Virus record (IMG/VR): IMGVR_UViG_3300048927_000250
Coordinates: 62,001-126,000 of that record
Length of the DNA: 64,000 nt
Reading direction: 5' to 3' (one strand)
Shown: positions 1-4,883 of the stretch, piece by piece
Layout of the letters: every line of letters starts with the position of its first letter
Numbering within the stretch: position 1 is the stretch's first letter
Made by a program: the position numbers and the translations under genes
The notes under the pieces: generated by a model
The model's database searches: none
The model's input: the letters and a program-made list of their open reading frames with translations, nothing else
Told to the model about the DNA's origin: nothing

Positions 1-436
1 CCGGTAATTCTGACACCGGGTCGTAGTCCGGGACATTACTGATTGCCTCGGTCTTGCATTTCTTGTCACTGATTTCTTTGGCGTCTTTGTACACCTTCAC
101 GCCTTCACGCCAGCTGCCGTCAGGGAGCGTAGCGGAATAGACTACGTAACTGATGTTACCTTTGATGAAGCGGTAATACATCCCACCACCACCGGAGAAT
201 GCCGTGTACGCGTAGCGCACATTAGTGCGGTTCCCGTAAATTGCAAGTTCAGTGGTGTCACCTTTATGGAAGGCGTACAGTGGGCCGTCAGCGTCGTCAA
301 TAATGGAGACGCTGTGTTGCGCATCAAGTTCACAATGGAAAATGAGTGGGACGTTAACAGGGATGTCTTCCGCATGGGCTTTTACTTGGTGAGCCAGGAA
401 CACCGCACAGATTGCCAATAACCATACACGAATCAT
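1..436 (-). CDS. Secreted/periplasmic hypothetical protein, runs off the left edge of the window (not in ORF track)
   Basis: Manual translation from ATG 436: MIRVWLLAICAVFLAHQVKAHAEDIPVNVPLIFHCELD...YTAFSGGGGMYYRFIKGNISYVVYS...KC...; Sec-type signal peptide; start overlaps the TGA of the upstream ORF (ATGA). Confidence 0.8.
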   Translation of the reverse strand, partial: MIRVWLLAICAVFLAHQVKAHAEDIPVNVPLIFHCELDAQHSVSIIDDADGPLYAFHKGDTTELAIYGNRTNVRYAYTAFSGGGGMYYRFIKGNISYVVYSATLPDGSWREGVKVYKDAKEISDKKCKTEAISNVPDYDPVSELP

Positions 437-978
437 TTTGCTTCTCCTTCTACTGCAAAGCTTGGGTGAGTTAAGACGTAGAACTTACCGTGTACGCCCA
501 TTTTACCGCGGGCGACCGTAATACCGATGTGGTCCATGAGTCTTTCGGCTTCAAGGACAACGGCTTCAAAGAACAGGTTGAATTCCCAGCCGTCGAGGCG
601 TTTGGTTTCCACGCACTCCACCAATGCTCGCATTCCCGCCAGGGTTTCTGTTTTCGCTGCGTCCATGCGGTTCACTATTACCGCACTATTGATTTCGCTG
701 AGTGTCTGAGTTTCCAACTCGCCCAGACTCGGGTAGACCATGAGGTTAATTTCCTCTTCGTCCATCTTCCGTTTACGCAACGCCGACCACGTTTGGAAAT
801 ACGGGAGTTCCATCACCTTGGTCCGGCTGTCACGGCCACGGCGTAACTCCATGTAGAGAATATAGTGGGCGACCGAAGCGGGGGTGAAGCCACAGTAGAA
901 GCCTTCCAGTACTGCGCCAATGCGCCCAGTCATCAGGGTGTTGATGCGAATGTCTTTCGTGTCAGTGTTGGTGTTCAT
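433..978 (-). CDS. Hypothetical protein (181 aa)
   Basis: ORF preceded by repeated TGTTAAAACTACGGAG module, GGAG 9 nt before ATG. Confidence 0.8.
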   Translation of the reverse strand: MNTNTDTKDIRINTLMTGRIGAVLEGFYCGFTPASVAHYILYMELRRGRDSRTKVMELPYFQTWSALRKRKMDEEEINLMVYPSLGELETQTLSEINSAVIVNRMDAAKTETLAGMRALVECVETKRLDGWEFNLFFEAVVLEAERLMDHIGITVARGKMGVHGKFYVLTHPSFAVEGEAK

Positions 979-987
979 CTTAAAATA

Positions 988-1003
988 CTCCGTAGTTTTA
1001 ACA
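988..1003 (-). repeat. 16-bp translation-start module, copy 1 (TGTTAAAACTACGGAG)
   Basis: Identical to 1516-1531 and 4285-4300; one mismatch to 4680-4695. Confidence 0.9.
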
Positions 1004-1009
1004 GGTTAG

Positions 1010-1507
1010 TTACACAAGGCTGTAGCGTTGTGGGTTAATGAGTTTGTCTTCTTCGAGCGCGAGTAGGCATTCCCGGTATTGTTTATCTTGTTCGCATACC
1101 GCGGCAGTGGCAAAGTAATCACGCAGGGACTTAATGTCATTGGTGACGACCCAGTGCGCGAACTGGAGGTTGGTCACCAACTCTAACGGTGTGATGGGTA
1201 AGTTTCTGGTTCCACCGGTGAGCGACAGGGTAACCACCATCTCCTTCCCAATTCTAACCATCTCTTGCAAGGTTTCGACTTTGCGTCCTGCACCCAATAC
1301 GTAATCGTAGAAAGCGCGCCCCTGGTCAGTCTTAAGGCGTTGACCTTCGATAAGGCGGACTAAATCCGTGCGGTAGTTCGTCAATTCTTTTACGGTAAGT
1401 TCTCCGTAGCGCCCGCGGTTGATGGTCATCTCGAGTGATTCCATTGGGCGATTAGGGCGACCGCTGTTCAGGTTAAGTGTTCTTAAAAAATCTGTTTGTC
1501 TTGACAT
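1010..1507 (-). CDS. Hypothetical protein (165 aa; start moved to ATG 1507)
   Basis: GGAG of the repeated module lies 8 nt before ATG 1507. Confidence 0.8.
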   Translation of the reverse strand: MSRQTDFLRTLNLNSGRPNRPMESLEMTINRGRYGELTVKELTNYRTDLVRLIEGQRLKTDQGRAFYDYVLGAGRKVETLQEMVRIGKEMVVTLSLTGGTRNLPITPLELVTNLQFAHWVVTNDIKSLRDYFATAAVCEQDKQYRECLLALEEDKLINPQRYSLV

Positions 1508-1515
1508 ATCGAGCA

Positions 1516-1531
1516 CTCCGTAGTTTTAACA
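1516..1531 (-). repeat. 16-bp translation-start module, copy 2
   Basis: Exact copy; directly abuts a UUCG hairpin. Confidence 0.9.
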
Positions 1532-1532
1532 A

Positions 1533-1556
1533 GGGGACCGAAGTCCCCCTTTTTTT
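1533..1556. terminator. Hairpin GGGGAC-TTCG-GTCCCC (minus-strand reading), T-tract on the plus-strand side
   Basis: 6-bp stem 1533-1538/1543-1548; poly-T 1550-1556 on plus strand, only TTGTT on minus strand. Confidence 0.55.
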
Positions 1557-1560
1557 AAGG

Positions 1561-2427
1561 TTAGAAACCGGTGAAAGACACACCGTCGATTTTACCGCCT
1601 TTCAGCACCAGCACTACATTCGGGTTACGTGACTTGTTGGCACGTGTGTAATGCGGCACTGGGCGTTCGCCAGGAATATCAGAACGTTCACGACCACCCA
1701 AGGTGACGGCTACACGACTGGTACCGTACATCGCATCCACCGCAGAACCAATGCGGTCGAAGTCATCCAGAGACAGCGTCAGTTCGCTGATAGCCGGTGC
1801 ACTCTCTTTGGCGTTCACGCGGTTAACCAGATTTTCGATAGCATTACCCATTTCTTTCCAGGAATGAATATTCAGGTAATGGCCAAAATCCATGGTCGCC
1901 TTCAGGTCCATTTCGTTGGTAAAGTGTTTATCTACACAACGGTCAATGGCCTTCAATATCGGTTTAATCATTGGTGCGCAGGTACGGTTTTCGATGTAAT
2001 CGAGATAAGTGCCGATATCTTCCTGGCTACGGGTACGGGTGGCGATGGCGTAGTAGATAGTGGCAGTCATGAACTCGGCGAATGAACCTTTGAAGTTCAC
2101 GTCCGGGTAAGTGGTCGGTAACACCAACAACTCTTCCCCTTCTGGTATCGCCTTGTCGGCTTCGATTTCCCCCATGGTATCGGCGAAGTAGGTGCGGACT
2201 TGCTGGATGACCTCCTCCTCTTCCTGGGAGAGTTCGTAGTCTGGTTCGTCACGGTGCAAGCGGACCAGGTTGCGCAGTACCTCAGCGCGCTGCTCCATGT
2301 CACCCTGAGCTTTACGACCGGATGCGGCTTTACCGATGTCAGTGGTATCACGCAGGTAGTTAGCGCTTTCTGCCAGTACGAGGGAACCAATAATCAGTGT
2401 GTTAATTTTAAATTCAGATACTTTCAT
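1561..2427 (-). CDS. Hypothetical protein (288 aa)
   Basis: Long ORF with TAAGGGG Shine-Dalgarno inside the repeated 17-mer. Confidence 0.85.
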   Translation of the reverse strand: MKVSEFKINTLIIGSLVLAESANYLRDTTDIGKAASGRKAQGDMEQRAEVLRNLVRLHRDEPDYELSQEEEEVIQQVRTYFADTMGEIEADKAIPEGEELLVLPTTYPDVNFKGSFAEFMTATIYYAIATRTRSQEDIGTYLDYIENRTCAPMIKPILKAIDRCVDKHFTNEMDLKATMDFGHYLNIHSWKEMGNAIENLVNRVNAKESAPAISELTLSLDDFDRIGSAVDAMYGTSRVAVTLGGRERSDIPGERPVPHYTRANKSRNPNVVLVLKGGKIDGVSFTGF

Positions 2428-2429
2428 GA

Positions 2430-2446
2430 GACAACCCCTTATTTAA
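2430..2446 (-). repeat. 17-bp translation-start module, copy 1 (TTAAATAAGGGGTTGTC)
   Basis: Exact copies at 48807-48823 and 51422-51438. Confidence 0.9.
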
Positions 2447-3065
2447 GTGTCAGTTTTTTGCGGACGTTGGCTTTAAAGTGCGAGCCGCAGGCCAGCGCTT
2501 GATAGTACAGTGCGGTGAACGGAAATATCCGTCCGATAGGTTTCTGTTCTTGCACGCTCCCTTCCTTGAAGGTAAAGCGGTAAATCACGCCACCACAACG
2601 TTCGTCGTGACGTATTGCCGTGGCCACGTATAGCCACGCTGCCAATACGCATTGGCTAATGTGGGTAACACGTTCTTTTGCATCACCCAAAATGATGGTG
2701 CTTTCCGGCGGGTACTCGATAAGCGTCCCGTCTAATGATGCGACGTAAATCGGACCATCGGTGATAATCAACTGTTCGCCCTTCATCCCTTCTTCCAGAA
2801 TCAGAAAGCGAGAGGTGTCGGCGTAGCTGAGGAATCCTGTCTCCTCTTTTGCAGCCATCAGTTGATAACGATAATCCCAGGCACGGGCCATGATGTTACT
2901 CCCGACGTAAGCCCAGAGTAAGACCTTATGACCATGAAAGGTAAAGGGGCCGTGAGGGTAACGGTACTTACGCCCACTGTCTTCAGTGTGCATCTTCCCG
3001 CCATGGGCTACAACAACGCGAGAGTCAACGGCCAATTCCCCGCGTGTATAAACCAGTATGCTCAT
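2439..3065 (-). CDS. Possible Ntn-hydrolase/proteasome-subunit-like protein (208 aa)
   Basis: N-terminus MSILVYTRGELAVDSR resembles the MTTIxxxxGxLAADSR start of phage HslV/proteasome-like proteins; motif resemblance only. Confidence 0.4.
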   Translation of the reverse strand: MSILVYTRGELAVDSRVVVAHGGKMHTEDSGRKYRYPHGPFTFHGHKVLLWAYVGSNIMARAWDYRYQLMAAKEETGFLSYADTSRFLILEEGMKGEQLIITDGPIYVASLDGTLIEYPPESTIILGDAKERVTHISQCVLAAWLYVATAIRHDERCGGVIYRFTFKEGSVQEQKPIGRIFPFTALYYQALACGSHFKANVRKKLTLK

Positions 3066-3262
3066 TTTATTCGGCTCTCCAATAACTGCCGCATTAACTC
3101 AGCCTCCAGCCGAGCTGTTGCCAGTGTGTGCTCTGTGAGTTCTGCGCGTCGCACCGGCGATTGAGCCATCGCCTCCGCCATGTAGTGAACGAAGGACTTG
3201 ACGGTTGAATCGACCTGCTGGCGTTTGTGCTCGGAACGGATTAAAGCGTCTAAGTCCTTCAT
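3062..3262 (-). CDS. Small hypothetical protein (66 aa)
   Basis: 4-nt overlap with the next gene; AAGGA-type RBS. Confidence 0.7.
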   Translation of the reverse strand: MKDLDALIRSEHKRQQVDSTVKSFVHYMAEAMAQSPVRRAELTEHTLATARLEAELMRQLLESRIK

Positions 3263-3272
3263 GTTGAATTCC

Positions 3273-3440
3273 TTATTCGCCTAAGCGATAAACGTCGTCA
3301 CCGCCGAAGATACGACTGAAGTCTTCTTCGAAACGGGTACGGTCCAGGGGTACGTCATCGAACTCGCCTGGCGCTGCTTTGTCGTAGTCCCCGGTACCAG
3401 GGAGTGTACGTGGTGCTGGAACAGTTTCATTTCTTGCCAT
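3273..3440 (-). CDS. Small acidic protein (55 aa, not in ORF track)
   Basis: MARNETVPAPRTLPGTGDYDKAAPGEFDDVPLDRTRFEEDFSRIFGGDDVYRLGE*; GAGG RBS; fills the intergenic gap exactly. Confidence 0.75.
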   Translation of the reverse strand: MARNETVPAPRTLPGTGDYDKAAPGEFDDVPLDRTRFEEDFSRIFGGDDVYRLGE

Positions 3441-3459
3441 TGTCAGGTTCCTCTATGGA

Positions 3460-3504
3460 ATAAAAAGGTGGGGGCGGCACGCCCCCTGTCGGTAATGTCC
3501 CGAC
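3460..3504 (-). terminator. Intrinsic terminator with a second upstream hairpin
   Basis: GGGGCG/CGCCCC stem 3471-3485 followed on minus strand by ACCTTTTTATT; GTCGG/CCGAC hairpin 3488-3504. Confidence 0.6.
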
Positions 3505-3528
3505 CAAACGAAGAGAACTTTTTAGTGA

Positions 3529-3852
3529 TTAGTGTACGAGGCGAGTTTCGCCGTCAACAACGCGGTGAGAGTCGCGGTCAGCTTCGGTCACGGCGATGTA
3601 TTCGACCGTACCGGTGAAGCCCATCTGACGCCCGTAGGTGTCTTCGTAAAACTCGGTCAGTTCACGAACATCGTTCGGAAGCGGACCGTCCACCTGGAAG
3701 AACTTCAGTTCCTGGTCCATGGTGGTGACCATCAGGTACTTCTGACCGACGCGCAGGTTCTGACGGTCGGTTGGGTGCATGTTCAACGAGAACACCTGGT
3801 TATCGTCGTTGGACAGTTCGATGCGGTTGATGTAGTTACGAATGATTTGCAT
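3529..3852 (-). CDS. Hypothetical protein (107 aa)
   Basis: ORF with CAGGAG RBS. Confidence 0.8.
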   Translation of the reverse strand: MQIIRNYINRIELSNDDNQVFSLNMHPTDRQNLRVGQKYLMVTTMDQELKFFQVDGPLPNDVRELTEFYEDTYGRQMGFTGTVEYIAVTEADRDSHRVVDGETRLVH

Positions 3853-3894
3853 GATAAAACTCCTGAAAGAATAGTTAGGATTGTAGAATGGGGA

Positions 3895-4275
3895 TTAGTT
3901 AACTTTACGGTAGACTGGCATCTTGCTCAGGGTGTCGGTGTGAACCGTGAACTCTTTGTCAATCCCTTTGTTCAGTTTATAGGCCAGGTAAGCACGCAGA
4001 CGCAGTGCATCACCCCATGTGAACATCCACTCGGTGTCCCGTTTCCAGAACCACGAGTTAAAGCGACCGAACTGTGATTGCATCACGTAGATACGGTCGT
4101 ACATCTTACCGGATAACTCTTCTTCCAGAATCTCCAGTAACTTCGCGGCTTCTTTCGGGTTCAAGGTGATTTCCTTGACGCCCTTCAACGCACGGTTCTT
4201 TTCGAAGTCCGCTTGCTCTTTCGCTACTGCCTTCGCTTCATCAACCAGAATCAAACTCATTAATAAATTCAACAT
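3895..4275 (-). CDS. Hypothetical protein (126 aa; start moved to ATG 4275)
   Basis: Repeated module GGAG 9 nt before ATG 4275. Confidence 0.8.
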   Translation of the reverse strand: MLNLLMSLILVDEAKAVAKEQADFEKNRALKGVKEITLNPKEAAKLLEILEEELSGKMYDRIYVMQSQFGRFNSWFWKRDTEWMFTWGDALRLRAYLAYKLNKGIDKEFTVHTDTLSKMPVYRKVN

Positions 4276-4284
4276 GTTCTTAAT

Positions 4285-4300
4285 CTCCGTAGTTTTAACA
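4285..4300 (-). repeat. 16-bp translation-start module, copy 3
   Basis: Exact copy. Confidence 0.9.
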
Positions 4301-4307
4301 GGGGTAC

Positions 4308-4670
4308 TTAGTGAATCTGCATCATGACTTCGGTGAGGGCAGGGGACGCCTTCCCAACGATGGTGTAGGTCCGCTCGGTGTCGAGCGCCATTGCTGCTAC
4401 ACATTCTTCTTTCAACTTTTCCGTGACGATAATGCGGCGTTGCTCATCCGTGAAGTGAATGAGGGAATGGGTGGTGGGGTCGAAGAAGTAGCTCCCCGCC
4501 ACTTTGCTGAGCGTGAATTCAAAATCACACACGCCGACGGCAATGTATTCTTTAAAGGCGTGCTGCATGGCCTCTATCAACTTGTGGTTAATGCGCACTT
4601 CCACATCGCATTCATTATCCACGACATTCAATTTACCCTGGGTGTGAATGCAAAAATGATACTGTTGCAT
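4308..4670 (-). CDS. Hypothetical protein (120 aa; start moved to ATG 4670)
   Basis: Repeated module GGAG 9 nt before ATG 4670. Confidence 0.8.
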   Translation of the reverse strand: MQQYHFCIHTQGKLNVVDNECDVEVRINHKLIEAMQHAFKEYIAVGVCDFEFTLSKVAGSYFFDPTTHSLIHFTDEQRRIIVTEKLKEECVAAMALDTERTYTIVGKASPALTEVMMQIH

Positions 4671-4679
4671 GAGGTTATT

Positions 4680-4695
4680 CTCCGTAGTTGTAACA
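4680..4695 (-). repeat. 16-bp translation-start module, copy 4 (TGTTACAACTACGGAG)
   Basis: One mismatch to the other three copies. Confidence 0.85.
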
Positions 4696-4731
4696 TTGAT
4701 ATCTAGGGGTTTAGTACCCTTATTCACCGAG

Positions 4732-4742
4732 AGAATATATAC
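4732..4742 (-). promoter_or_regulatory. Possible early promoter (GTATATATTCT)
   Basis: Resembles the GTCTATATTAC motif found at 7397, 19681, 20622 and 54270; heads the left early cassette. Confidence 0.4.
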
Positions 4743-4764
4743 TTCAAAATCCTTTAGATAGGGA

Positions 4765-4883
4765 ATAAAGAAAGAATCTCCCCTCCAGCCAAAAGACGTA
4801 AAGTCTCTTGACTAAAGGGGTGCGAGCCTAATAGCAGGAAGATGCTGAACGGGAGACTTTACAACCGTTCTCATCCACTCGCA
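4765..4883 (-). ncRNA. Candidate structured sRNA / attenuator with terminator-like 18-bp stem and loop-loop complementarity
   Basis: Stem 4820-4803/4797-4780 pairs fully only on the minus strand (4 G.U); hairpin 4875-4841 has loop GTAAAGTCTC (4862-4853) complementary to GAGACTTTAC (4807-4798); P1 4883-4877/4827-4821. Confidence 0.6.

What the first reader, a model, noticed from the sequence alone, without database searches (positions are those of the whole stretch)
988..4695. Four accessory genes start with the same 16-bp module (TGTTAAAACTACGGAG)
Seen: copies at 988, 1516, 4285 (identical) and 4680 (1 mismatch), each with GGAG 8-9 nt before an ATG; the full motif was not seen elsewhere in the window. 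Twelve conserved bases lie upstream of the Shine-Dalgarno, more than ribosome binding requires. Two copies begin about 6-7 nt after the previous stop and one abuts a UUCG hairpin. Inference: a binding site for a phage translational activator/repressor or processing nuclease that co-regulates early genes, or a recombination seed that lets gene cassettes be gained, lost and shuffled.
Basis: partly seen in the sequence, partly recalled or inferred. Interest (0 to 1): 0.6.

Follow-up and report, generated by a model that had tools for sequence, protein, structure and literature searches.

The report
Shared start-site motif of phage genes
A ten-base sequence (AACTACGGAG) lies just upstream of the start codon of seven unrelated small genes in an Erwinia jumbo phage and is almost unchanged in diverged relatives, which suggests these genes share a still-unknown control of translation.

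Summary
The motif lies on the minus strand at window 988, 1516 and 4285 (exact) and 4680 (1 mismatch). Each copy has GGAG 8-9 nt before an ATG. The window is part of a 215-kb jumbo phage about 98.7% identical to Erwinia phage PhiEaH1.

Genome-wide, the core AACTACGGAG occurs 7 times (0.38 expected, P about 2e-7). All copies are on the coding strand, 7-9 nt before the ATG of seven ORFan genes that are not paralogs.

In metagenomic relatives, whose proteins are about 31-88% identical, the core is intact at 25 of 26 sites. Flanks and spacers are only about 54% identical. The constrained part is therefore (A)AACTAC+GGAG. The upstream TGTT half is only a preference.

All seven copies lie downstream of three special copies of a TATATTAC-type (virion RNA polymerase-like) early promoter. 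Three of these copies (window 988 and 1516, and one just outside the window) also lie beyond terminator-like hairpins, so their early timing is less certain.

One gene replacement is bounded exactly by two motif copies, but most gene-content breakpoints lie elsewhere.

Best reading: a start-associated, ribosome-site-embedded RNA motif, analogous to the SAS of Cluster K mycobacteriophages. It is probably read by an unknown sequence-specific factor. No RegA, RegB, CsrA or cold-shock-domain homolog is encoded, and no transcript data exist. The function is inferred, not shown.

The parts
988..1003 (-). Motif copy (exact 16-mer), core AACTACGGAG; GGAG lies 9 nt before the ATG at 978
   Evidence: The orthologous copy is kept in L124, L125, L126, L127 and L147.
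433..978 (-). 181-aa ORFan gene served by the copy at 988
   Evidence: Orthologs are 49-81% identical.
1516..1531 (-). Motif copy (exact 16-mer); GGAG lies 8 nt before the ATG at 1507
   Evidence: The copy is kept in L124, L127 and L147 although the protein behind it is only 31-61% identical or unrecognisable.
1010..1507 (-). 165-aa ORFan gene served by the copy at 1516. The PhiEaH1 record starts it at the GTG at 1516, which is probably wrong.
1533..1549 (.). UUCG-loop G+C hairpin that abuts the motif. It is terminator-like only on the + strand (T-run). On the gene strand it has no U-tract.
   Evidence: The hairpin family GGGACTTCGGTCCC occurs 8 times in the genome.
4285..4300 (-). Motif copy (exact 16-mer), 7 nt after the previous stop; GGAG lies 9 nt before the ATG at 4275
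   Evidence: The copy is kept in L124 and L147.
3895..4275 (-). 126-aa ORFan gene served by the copy at 4285
   Evidence: 68% identical ortholog in L124
4680..4695 (-). Motif copy with 1 mismatch (TGTTACAACTACGGAG); GGAG lies 9 nt before the ATG at 4670. It is the last part of the promoter-leader module.
4308..4670 (-). 120-aa ORFan found only in the PhiEaH1 species. In relative L124 an unrelated 88-aa gene fills this slot, with homology breaking just after GGAGAA and resuming 6 nt before the next motif copy.
4705..4747 (-). Early-promoter-like site (TATATTCT at 4739-4732, PWM score 32.3) plus a conserved leader element, GGGTACTAAACCCCT (4719-4705). It is one of three such modules in the genome, and all seven motif copies lie downstream of these three.
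   Evidence: The same 38-42-nt element is repeated three times in the strain held in runs X1-X4.

Best explanation
The motif is a start-associated element built into the ribosome-binding site of the mRNA. Its consensus is yUUGyUW-AAACUAC-GGAG-N6-9-AUG. GGAG is the Shine-Dalgarno core. The invariant, single-stranded AACUAC directly 5' of it most likely acts as a recognition element for a sequence-specific trans-acting factor. That factor is probably a protein, phage- or host-encoded, and is not yet identified. Sitting next to or on the Shine-Dalgarno sequence, the factor would set ribosome loading for a small regulon of seven ORFan genes. These genes lie downstream of three special virion-RNA-polymerase-type early promoters in PhiEaH1-like jumbo phages. 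The most likely purpose is co-ordinate switching, for example shut-off after the early phase.

Shown here: enrichment, strand and spacing, non-homology of the genes, conservation beyond the SD in diverged relatives, and position downstream of predicted early promoters. Three copies lie beyond terminator-like hairpins.

Inferred: action at the RNA level, the existence of a factor, and the direction of regulation.

As a by-product, the identical 10-16-nt blocks that flank neighbouring small genes can serve as microhomology for cassette exchange. One such swap was seen.
For: Enrichment and position: 7 copies of AACTACGGAG against 0.38 expected (P = 1.6e-7). All are on the coding strand, 7-9 nt before an ATG. 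There are none in the relatives 2050HW and PCH45, 7 in PhiEaH1, and 7 plus one intragenic copy in Ea277G.

Genes: the seven proteins are not paralogs and match no Pfam or PHROG family.

Conservation: the core is intact at 25 of 26 sites in at least five diverged lineages. AACTAC is 97.6% identical to this genome's copy, against 54% in the flanks and spacer (Fisher P = 9e-16) and 62.5% for the same six positions of non-motif genes. It stays fixed in front of a gene whose protein has drifted to 31-61% identity or beyond recognition.

Specificity: the two conserved C's cannot pair with the 16S rRNA 3' end, for which UAAGGAG is the perfect complement (established knowledge). Near-copies such as GCTACGGAG and AAACTAAGGAG are not conserved in relatives.

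Structure and setting: the AACUAC segment is predicted mostly unpaired (0.70 against 0.53 for other GGAG genes, P = 0.02), and the copies share no common fold. All copies lie downstream of 3 of the 18 early-promoter PWM hits. The genome encodes its own RNAP beta and beta' fragments.
Against: No factor was found. There is no RegB, RegA, CsrA or CSD homolog, and no complementary RNA is encoded.

Several other ribosome-site regions of this phage group are also strongly conserved between lineages, so conservation alone does not require a special factor.

One lineage changed the copy before the 122-aa gene to AAACCTATGGAG while keeping the other four, so the core is not indispensable for every gene.

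The early timing of the copies at window 988 and 1516, and of the copy just outside the window, rests on read-through of terminator-like hairpins.

The 'RNA' runs that hold the region contain whole-genome contigs and give no transcript information.
Confidence: 0.5

Rival explanations
1. It is simply a good ribosome-binding site with no dedicated factor. An A/U-rich single-stranded leader plus GGAG was copied locally between neighbouring intergenic regions and is kept by ordinary selection for efficient initiation.
For: The motif sits exactly where an RBS sits, and its U and A at -3 and -2 could pair with the last two bases of 16S rRNA. The phage has other repeated RBS modules that cluster regionally and are conserved in relatives: TAAATAAGGGGTTGT (4 copies) and CATCG-hairpin-TAAGGA (3 copies). 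The 5' TTGTT half is degenerate. A distant homolog of the 181-aa gene uses a plain CTAAGGAG.
Against: Both C's and the AA are invariant at 25 of 26 sites although they add no rRNA pairing, and an A at -1 would make a stronger SD. Among 101 GGAG-type sites the 10 upstream positions are otherwise unconstrained. RBS sequences of neighbouring non-motif genes such as the 157-aa gene drift freely between GAAGGAG, TAAGGAA and GAAGGAA.
Confidence: 0.25
2. It is the target of a sequence-specific endoribonuclease that inactivates a subset of early mRNAs at their Shine-Dalgarno sequence. This would be functionally like T4 RegB/S1 cleaving GGAG, but with an unrelated enzyme.
For: GGAG is in the SD of probable early genes. 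The region is single-stranded. Several spacers after GGAG are A-rich and resemble the RegB/S1 consensus GGAGRAYARAA (PMC1702504; spacers). Two copies directly follow hairpins that could protect the upstream 3' end after cleavage.
Against: There is no REGB_T4 homolog in the genome. In T4 the specificity lies 3' of GGAG, whereas here the conserved part is 5' and the 3' spacer is only about 54% conserved. There are no 5'-end data.
Confidence: 0.1
3. It is an internal promoter or start site for the phage's non-virion RNA polymerase. TACG in the motif resembles the phiKZ late-promoter core TATG (-3 to +1), and one lineage has TATG there.
For: The phiKZ nvRNAP needs only TATG at the start site (PMC7598289; PMC12809450). 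The variant in L139 reads CCTATGGAG. Two copies follow hairpins directly.
Against: There are only 7 sites, none before structural genes. TACG is depleted upstream of genes (0.74x) and TATG shows no positional peak. Initiation at that G would leave an 11-13-nt leader starting with GGAG, whereas phiKZ leaders are mostly 31-40 nt. Two copies lie about 50 nt behind a strong early promoter and two lie directly behind another motif gene, where no promoter is needed. The early-promoter PWM does not hit the motif.
Confidence: 0.08
4. Its main role is at the DNA level, as a recombination seed that lets gene cassettes be swapped, gained or lost (like the PeSL cassettes of T4-type phages).
For: The 120-aa ORFan (window 4308-4670) is replaced in L124 by an unrelated 88-aa gene. 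Homology ends 2 nt after GGAG and resumes 6 nt before the next copy. The leader of that locus in L124 looks more like the non-syntenic copy at genome 15966. Another repeated RBS module flanks a 124-aa gene indel as a roughly 35-nt direct repeat.
Against: Ten to 16 nt is very short for homologous exchange. The motif genes are among the stable, syntenic genes of the region in all lineages. At least five other gene-content differences lie at junctions without the motif. A DNA-only role does not explain the fixed distance to ATG or the single orientation.
Confidence: 0.07

Closest known systems
Start-Associated Sequences (SAS) of Cluster K mycobacteriophages (Pope et al. 2011, PMC3203893; still without a proven function in 2025, PMC12699233)
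   Same: Both are short asymmetric repeats present in about 7-19 copies per genome, in one orientation, a few nt upstream of ATG starts. Both contain the GGAG/AGGAG SD core with conservation that goes beyond what can pair with 16S rRNA. Both are confined to non-structural genes, precede genes of different families, and are conserved across related phages.
   Different: The sequence is unrelated (AACTACGGAG against GGGATAGGAGCCC), as are the host phylum and phage type (a virulent jumbo phage with its own RNA polymerases against temperate siphoviruses). Here the extra conservation is only 5' of the SD. No ESAS-like inverted repeats were seen. The SAS mostly follow large intergenic gaps, whereas two copies here lie 6-7 nt after the previous stop.
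T4 RegB/S1 cleavage sites (GGAGRAYARAA) and RegA translational operators
   Same: They are sequence signals that overlap the SD of a subset of early phage mRNAs and allow post-transcriptional shut-off. They are single-stranded and contain GGAG.
   Different: No RegB or RegA homolog is present. RegB/S1 specificity lies 3' of GGAG, whereas here it lies 5'. No cleavage or binding has been shown.
PeSL regulatory cassettes of T4-type phages (Arbiol et al. 2010, PMC2839356)
   Same: They are repeated regulatory sequences between small ORFan genes in an early, plastic genome region. Here one gene swap is bounded by the repeats.
   Different: PeSLs are about 50-60 bp, made of a sigma70 promoter plus a terminator stem-loop. 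The motif is 10-16 nt and has neither. The roughly 80-nt promoter-leader module present 3 times in this genome is the closer PeSL analogue, not the motif itself.
phiKZ-type promoters (early AT-rich TATATTAC-like; late TATG at the start site)
   Same: The phage has a clear TATATTAC-N5-TGA motif (18 sites, all on one strand) shared with 2050HW and PCH45. The motif contains TACG, one base away from TATG.
   Different: The motif does not match the early-promoter matrix. TACG is not enriched before genes. Copy number and position do not fit a general promoter class.

Membership tests
Start-associated sequences (SAS-like elements) | Short asymmetric repeat, many copies per genome, far above chance | tested here: met
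   7 copies of the 10-mer against 0.38 expected; 4 copies in the window against a mean of 0.48 in shuffles
Start-associated sequences (SAS-like elements) | One orientation, a few nt upstream of start codons (mostly ATG) | tested here: met
   All 7 copies are on the coding strand, with GGAG 7-9 nt before an ATG. The only off-site copy lies inside a CDS in Ea277G.
Start-associated sequences (SAS-like elements) | Contains the SD core, but conservation extends beyond rRNA pairing | tested here: met
   AACTAC is 97.6% conserved against 54% in the flanks. The inability of the C's and AA to pair rests on the known 16S 3' end. The Erwinia 16S sequence was not fetched here.
Start-associated sequences (SAS-like elements) | Precedes genes of different families, is restricted to non-structural genes, and is conserved among related phages | tested here: met
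Start-associated sequences (SAS-like elements) | The Cluster K consensus GGGATAGGAGCCC and companion ESAS inverted repeats | tested here: not met
   The sequence is different and there are no conserved inverted repeats upstream. This is an analogue, not a homolog.
T4 RegB/S1 target | A RegB nuclease is encoded | tested here: not met
   PF10715 gives no hit at E <= 1
T4 RegB/S1 target | Specificity in the 7 A-rich nt 3' of GGAG | tested here: not met
   The spacer is only about 54% conserved; the conserved part is 5' (PMC1702504)
T4 RegB/S1 target | Cleavage between G and A of GGAG during infection | not testable with these tools
   No usable RNA reads; runs X1-X4 hold genome-length contigs
T4 RegA operator | A RegA repressor is encoded | tested here: not met
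   PF01818 gives no hit
PeSL-type mobile regulatory cassette | Promoter plus terminator stem-loop within the repeat | tested here: not met
   The motif has no promoter match. Only 2 of 7 copies follow a hairpin.
PeSL-type mobile regulatory cassette | Insertions, deletions and replacements bounded by the repeats | tested here: inconclusive
   One replacement is bounded by two copies. At least 5 other differences lie elsewhere.
phiKZ-type nvRNAP late promoter | TATG at -3 to +1, with a primary 5' end at the G | tested here: not met
   The motif has TACG. TACG is depleted upstream of genes and shows no positional signal. The start site itself is not testable.
Jumbo-phage vRNAP early promoter | AT-rich core of about 10 nt (here TATATTAC-N5-TGA) | tested here: not met
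   None of the 18 PWM hits falls on a motif copy

The most novel reading that the evidence does not exclude
AACUAC-GGAG is the operator of a previously unknown post-transcriptional regulon in a jumbo phage that carries its own RNA polymerases. An unidentified sequence-specific RNA-binding protein or nuclease, unrelated to RegA, RegB or CsrA, would read the six bases next to the Shine-Dalgarno sequence. It would switch a defined subset of virion-polymerase-transcribed early ORFan genes on or off together. The three TATATTCTCT/GGGTACTA promoter-leader modules would define the same immediate-early class.
Probability: 0.3. Interest if true: 0.7.

Novelty: new variant of a known kind. Interest (0 to 1): 0.45.

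Why it matters
Start-associated motifs have been known since 2011 only from Cluster K mycobacteriophages, and their function is still open. Finding an independent, equally clean case would show that the phenomenon is general. This case is in a Gram-negative, virulent jumbo phage with its own transcription machinery.

It also offers a tractable system with seven sites, a 10-nt core and a natural variant lineage. It gives a concrete handle on how early ORFan genes of PhiEaH1-like phages are co-regulated.

In practice the motif corrects start-codon calls. Two of the four window genes are annotated in PhiEaH1 from upstream GTGs. Together with the promoter map, it also marks a candidate immediate-early gene set in phages that are considered for fire-blight biocontrol.

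Tried and rejected
- An exact 14-mer scan of IMG/VR gave only single, chance-level hits in unrelated contigs.
- The search for related loci with the 165-aa protein found nothing in IMG/VR.
- tblastn of two motif genes against 50,697 phage records found only the PhiEaH1 species.
- Four 'RNA' runs that hold the region turned out to carry 25-175-kb contigs of a roughly 98% identical strain, so they give no transcript ends or levels.
- No RegB, RegA, CsrA or cold-shock-domain gene was found.
- Pfam, PHROGs and the ESM Atlas gave nothing for the motif genes.
- No sequence complementary to the motif is encoded beyond chance. A 7-mer match in two early promoters is within expectation.
- There is no shared secondary structure around the copies and no Rfam family.
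- Positional enrichment of TATG or TACG as a polymerase start signal was not found.
- Lineage-wide co-variation of the motif, which would have pointed to a co-evolving factor, was not found. The lineage with the variant CCTATGGAG keeps the canonical core at its other four sites.
- Contig L145 was a fragment without the gene start.
- A literature string search for TATATTAC returned only unrelated papers.
- The apparent replacement of the 165-aa gene in L125 is a diverged homolog (31%). The one in L147 has no BLASTP match and shares only a C-terminal motif by eye. Neither counts as a clear cassette swap.

Full report
**Observation.** The 16-mer TGTTAAAACTACGGAG is present on the minus strand at window 988-1003, 1516-1531 and 4285-4300 (exact) and at 4680-4695 (one mismatch). 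There is no other match with up to 3 mismatches in the 64 kb, and none of 100 dinucleotide shuffles reaches four matches. Read on the minus strand, GGAG is followed by 9, 8, 9 and 9 nt and then ATG, at 978, 1507, 4275 and 4670. The copies at 988 and 4285 begin 6 and 7 nt after the stop of the preceding gene. The copy at 1516 abuts a UUCG-loop hairpin (1533-1549).

**What the genome is.** The window is positions 62001-126000 of a 215,418-bp virus record. The record is about 98.7% identical to Erwinia phage PhiEaH1 and to vB_Ea277G, genus Iapetusvirus. It encodes fragments of multisubunit RNA polymerase beta and beta'. A paper on the nucleus-forming Serratia phage PCH45 names PhiEaH1 among its closest, though distant, relatives. 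All genes around the motif are annotated as hypothetical.

**Genome-wide distribution.**
- The core AACTACGGAG occurs 7 times in the genome against 0.38 expected under a first-order Markov model (Poisson P = 1.6e-7).
- All seven copies are on the minus (coding) strand, with GGAG 7-9 nt before an ATG. They lie at genome 15914, 61114, 62994, 63522, 66291, 66686 and 190849.
- PhiEaH1 has the same 7 copies. Ea277G has 7 plus one chance copy inside a large CDS. The more distant relatives 2050HW and PCH45 have none.
- The seven downstream proteins (69-181 aa) are not detectably related to each other. They match no Pfam or PHROG family.
- The three proteins that were searched have no homologs outside PhiEaH1-like phages. 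The two put to the ESM Atlas gave no usable hit.
- The shared sequence is therefore not a by-product of gene duplication.
- Among 101 predicted genes with a GGAG-type site, the ten positions upstream of GGAG are otherwise unconstrained.

**Conservation in relatives.** Protein searches found metagenomic contigs of diverged relatives. These cover the five-copy cluster (L124, L125, L126, L127, L147) and the copy at genome 190849 (L139-L143). Orthologous proteins are about 31-88% identical where homology is detectable.
- At these loci the core AACTAC+GGAG is intact at 25 of 26 sites.
- In ungapped comparisons with this genome, AACTAC is 97.6% identical, the six bases further 5' are 67%, and the more distant flank and the spacer after GGAG are 54% (Fisher P = 9e-16).
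- The same six positions in front of non-motif genes of the same operons are 62.5% identical. This control is heterogeneous, because some other ribosome-site regions are also very well conserved.
- The core stays fixed in front of a gene whose product has drifted to 31-61% identity, or beyond recognition in L147.
- The single exception is the most diverged lineage (L139/L140), where the copy before the 122-aa gene reads AAACCTATGGAG. The same contig keeps the canonical core at its other four sites (L147). There is thus no lineage-wide co-variation.
- Near-copies in this genome (GCTACGGAG, AAACTAAGGAG) are not conserved in relatives.
- A remote homolog of the 181-aa gene uses a plain CTAAGGAG.

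The constrained unit is therefore (A)AACTAC plus GGAG.

**Transcriptional setting.**
- A position matrix built from an obvious repeated motif (yTnARGtmTATATTACy-N4-TGA) gives 18 hits, all on the minus strand.
- TATATTAC-N5-TGA is likewise enriched and strand-biased in 2050HW (19 against 1-2 for the control pattern) and PCH45 (15 against 2-3).
[quoted passage not shown] The assignment here is by analogy, not by experiment.
- Three of the 18 sites form a subtype: gtaTATATTCTCTnGGTGAnnTAGGGTACTAnACC, at genome 15966, 66739 (window 4739) and 191616.
- All seven motif copies lie downstream of these three promoters and before the next early promoter or strand switch. Two copies sit about 50 nt behind the promoter as the last part of a conserved leader.
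- Caveat: the copies at window 1516 and 988, and the one at genome 61114, are 3.2-5.6 kb downstream, beyond terminator-like hairpins. Their early timing depends on read-through.

**Gene-content breakpoints.**
- Between this genome and L124, BLASTN homology runs through the promoter and leader and stops 2 nt after GGAG (L124 6378 = genome 66678). It resumes 6 nt before the next motif copy (L124 6662 = genome 66306).
- In between, the 120-aa ORFan of this phage is replaced by an unrelated 88-aa gene.
- The leader in L124 is also more like the non-syntenic copy at genome 15966 than like the syntenic one.
- This is one clean cassette swap bounded by two motif copies.
- Other differences in the same regions lie at junctions without the motif: 70-aa, 296-aa and 168-aa genes in L124, and 89-aa and 288-aa genes in L125.
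- A 124-aa gene present in L139, L141 and L143 but absent here is flanked by a roughly 35-nt direct repeat of a different ribosome-site module, CATCG-hairpin-TAAGGA.
- Repeated ribosome-site modules in general, not this motif in particular, are where these genomes break and rejoin. The motif genes themselves are syntenic and persistent.

**Mechanism tests.**
- The copies share no secondary structure. AACUAC is predicted mostly unpaired (0.70 against 0.53 for other GGAG genes, P = 0.02).
- No Rfam family matches.
- No complementary RNA is encoded beyond chance.
- The genome has no homolog of T4 RegB, T4 RegA, CsrA or a cold-shock domain.
- TACG in the motif is one base away from the phiKZ late-promoter core TATG (PMC12809450), and the L139 variant has TATG. 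However, TACG is depleted upstream of genes, TATG has no positional peak, and copy number and placement do not fit a promoter class.
- The only public 'RNA' runs that hold the region contain genome-length contigs of a roughly 98% identical strain and say nothing about transcripts.
- In that strain one copy carries T to A at motif position 3 and a 1-nt shorter spacer. Both changes lie outside the core.

**Interpretation.** The position, orientation and spacing show that GGAG is the Shine-Dalgarno sequence of these genes. The 3' end of 16S rRNA can pair with UAAGGAG (established knowledge). The conserved C next to GGAG, and the AAC further 5', cannot be explained by rRNA pairing. Yet they are the most conserved intergenic bases in a fast-evolving region, and they are shared by unrelated genes.

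The most economical reading is a start-associated RNA element recognised sequence-specifically by a trans-acting factor that modulates initiation on a small, probably immediate-early, set of mRNAs (confidence 0.5). The rivals are:
- a plain, locally copied strong ribosome site (0.25);
- a RegB-like nuclease target (0.1);
- an internal polymerase start site (0.08);
- a primarily recombinational role (0.07).

**Comparison with known systems.** The closest known kind is the Start-Associated Sequence of Cluster K mycobacteriophages (PMC3203893). The function of the SAS was still unverified in 2025 (PMC12699233). All the defining positional and conservation features are met here. The sequence, the host, the phage type and the absence of ESAS repeats differ, so this is an analogue and not a member by descent. 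T4 RegB/S1 sites (PMC1702504) and PeSL cassettes (PMC2839356) resemble it in single aspects only and fail their defining tests.

**Verdict.** This is a real, statistically solid and evolutionarily constrained motif. Its cis-regulatory nature at the ribosome site is well supported. The factor and the direction of regulation are inferred. Interest is moderate. It is a new variant of a known, still unexplained kind of element, in a phage group where it could be tested.

Noticed in passing
window 4739, 7404, 19688, 20629, 54277 (minus strand); 18 sites genome-wide: An early-promoter-like motif, yTnARGtmTATATTACy-N4-TGA, occurs only on the minus strand. TATATTAC-N5-TGA is also enriched and strand-biased in Serratia phages 2050HW and PCH45, so it is probably the virion-RNAP early promoter of this clade.
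   Followed up: partly
window 4705-4747; genome 15966 and 191616 (L006, L007): A promoter-plus-leader module of about 80 nt (TATATTCTCT..GGTGA..TAGGGTACTAnACC) is present three times per genome and conserved in relatives. The first gene behind it differs between lineages (120-aa against 88-aa gene; 124-aa gene present or absent), so this slot is a hot spot of gene turnover.
   Followed up: partly
window 2427-2447, 48820, 51435; genome 33262: A second repeated ribosome-site module, TAAATAAGGGGTTGT (4 copies, all before ATG). The copy before the 288-aa gene is identical in L124 and L147.
   Followed up: partly
genome 191542, 190454, 186518 (L007 region); L139-L143: A third module is CATCG, then a short GC hairpin, then TAAGGA, then ATG. 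A 124-aa gene present in L139, L141 and L143 but absent here and in L142 is flanked by two copies as a roughly 35-nt direct repeat, which looks like deletion or insertion by recombination between RBS modules.
   Followed up: partly
window 1533-1549 and 7 other genome sites: A UUCG-tetraloop hairpin, GGGACTTCGGTCCC, occurs 8 times. At 1533 the T-run is on the + strand, opposite to the genes, so it would terminate antisense transcription rather than the operon.
   Followed up: no
window 1879-2314: Inside the 288-aa gene, the roughly 98% identical strain in runs X1-X4 has a 434-nt patch of the same length that is too diverged to align. This is a mosaic segment within an otherwise near-identical genome.
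   Followed up: no
window 1516 and 4727 (L008 features BASYS00161 and BASYS00167): The PhiEaH1 record starts two motif genes at upstream GTG codons, one inside the motif and one inside the promoter leader. The ATGs at 1507 and 4670 fit the SD spacing, the relatives and the protein clusters better.
   Followed up: partly
window 4780-4820, minus strand: An 18-pair hairpin followed by a T-rich tail lies just upstream of the early promoter at 4739. It is probably the terminator of the preceding operon.
   Followed up: no
runs X1-X4: Libraries labelled metatranscriptomic RNA-Seq assemble into 25-175-kb contigs of the phage. They behave like DNA and cannot be used as expression evidence.
   Followed up: yes
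L124 9454, L125 2-466, L127 495, L147 2742 against window 1010-1507: The 165-aa gene family evolves extremely fast (61% down to undetectable identity). Only a C-terminal DK(L/I)xxPxxY(S/T) motif, the upstream hairpin and the AACTACGGAG site are kept.
   Followed up: partly
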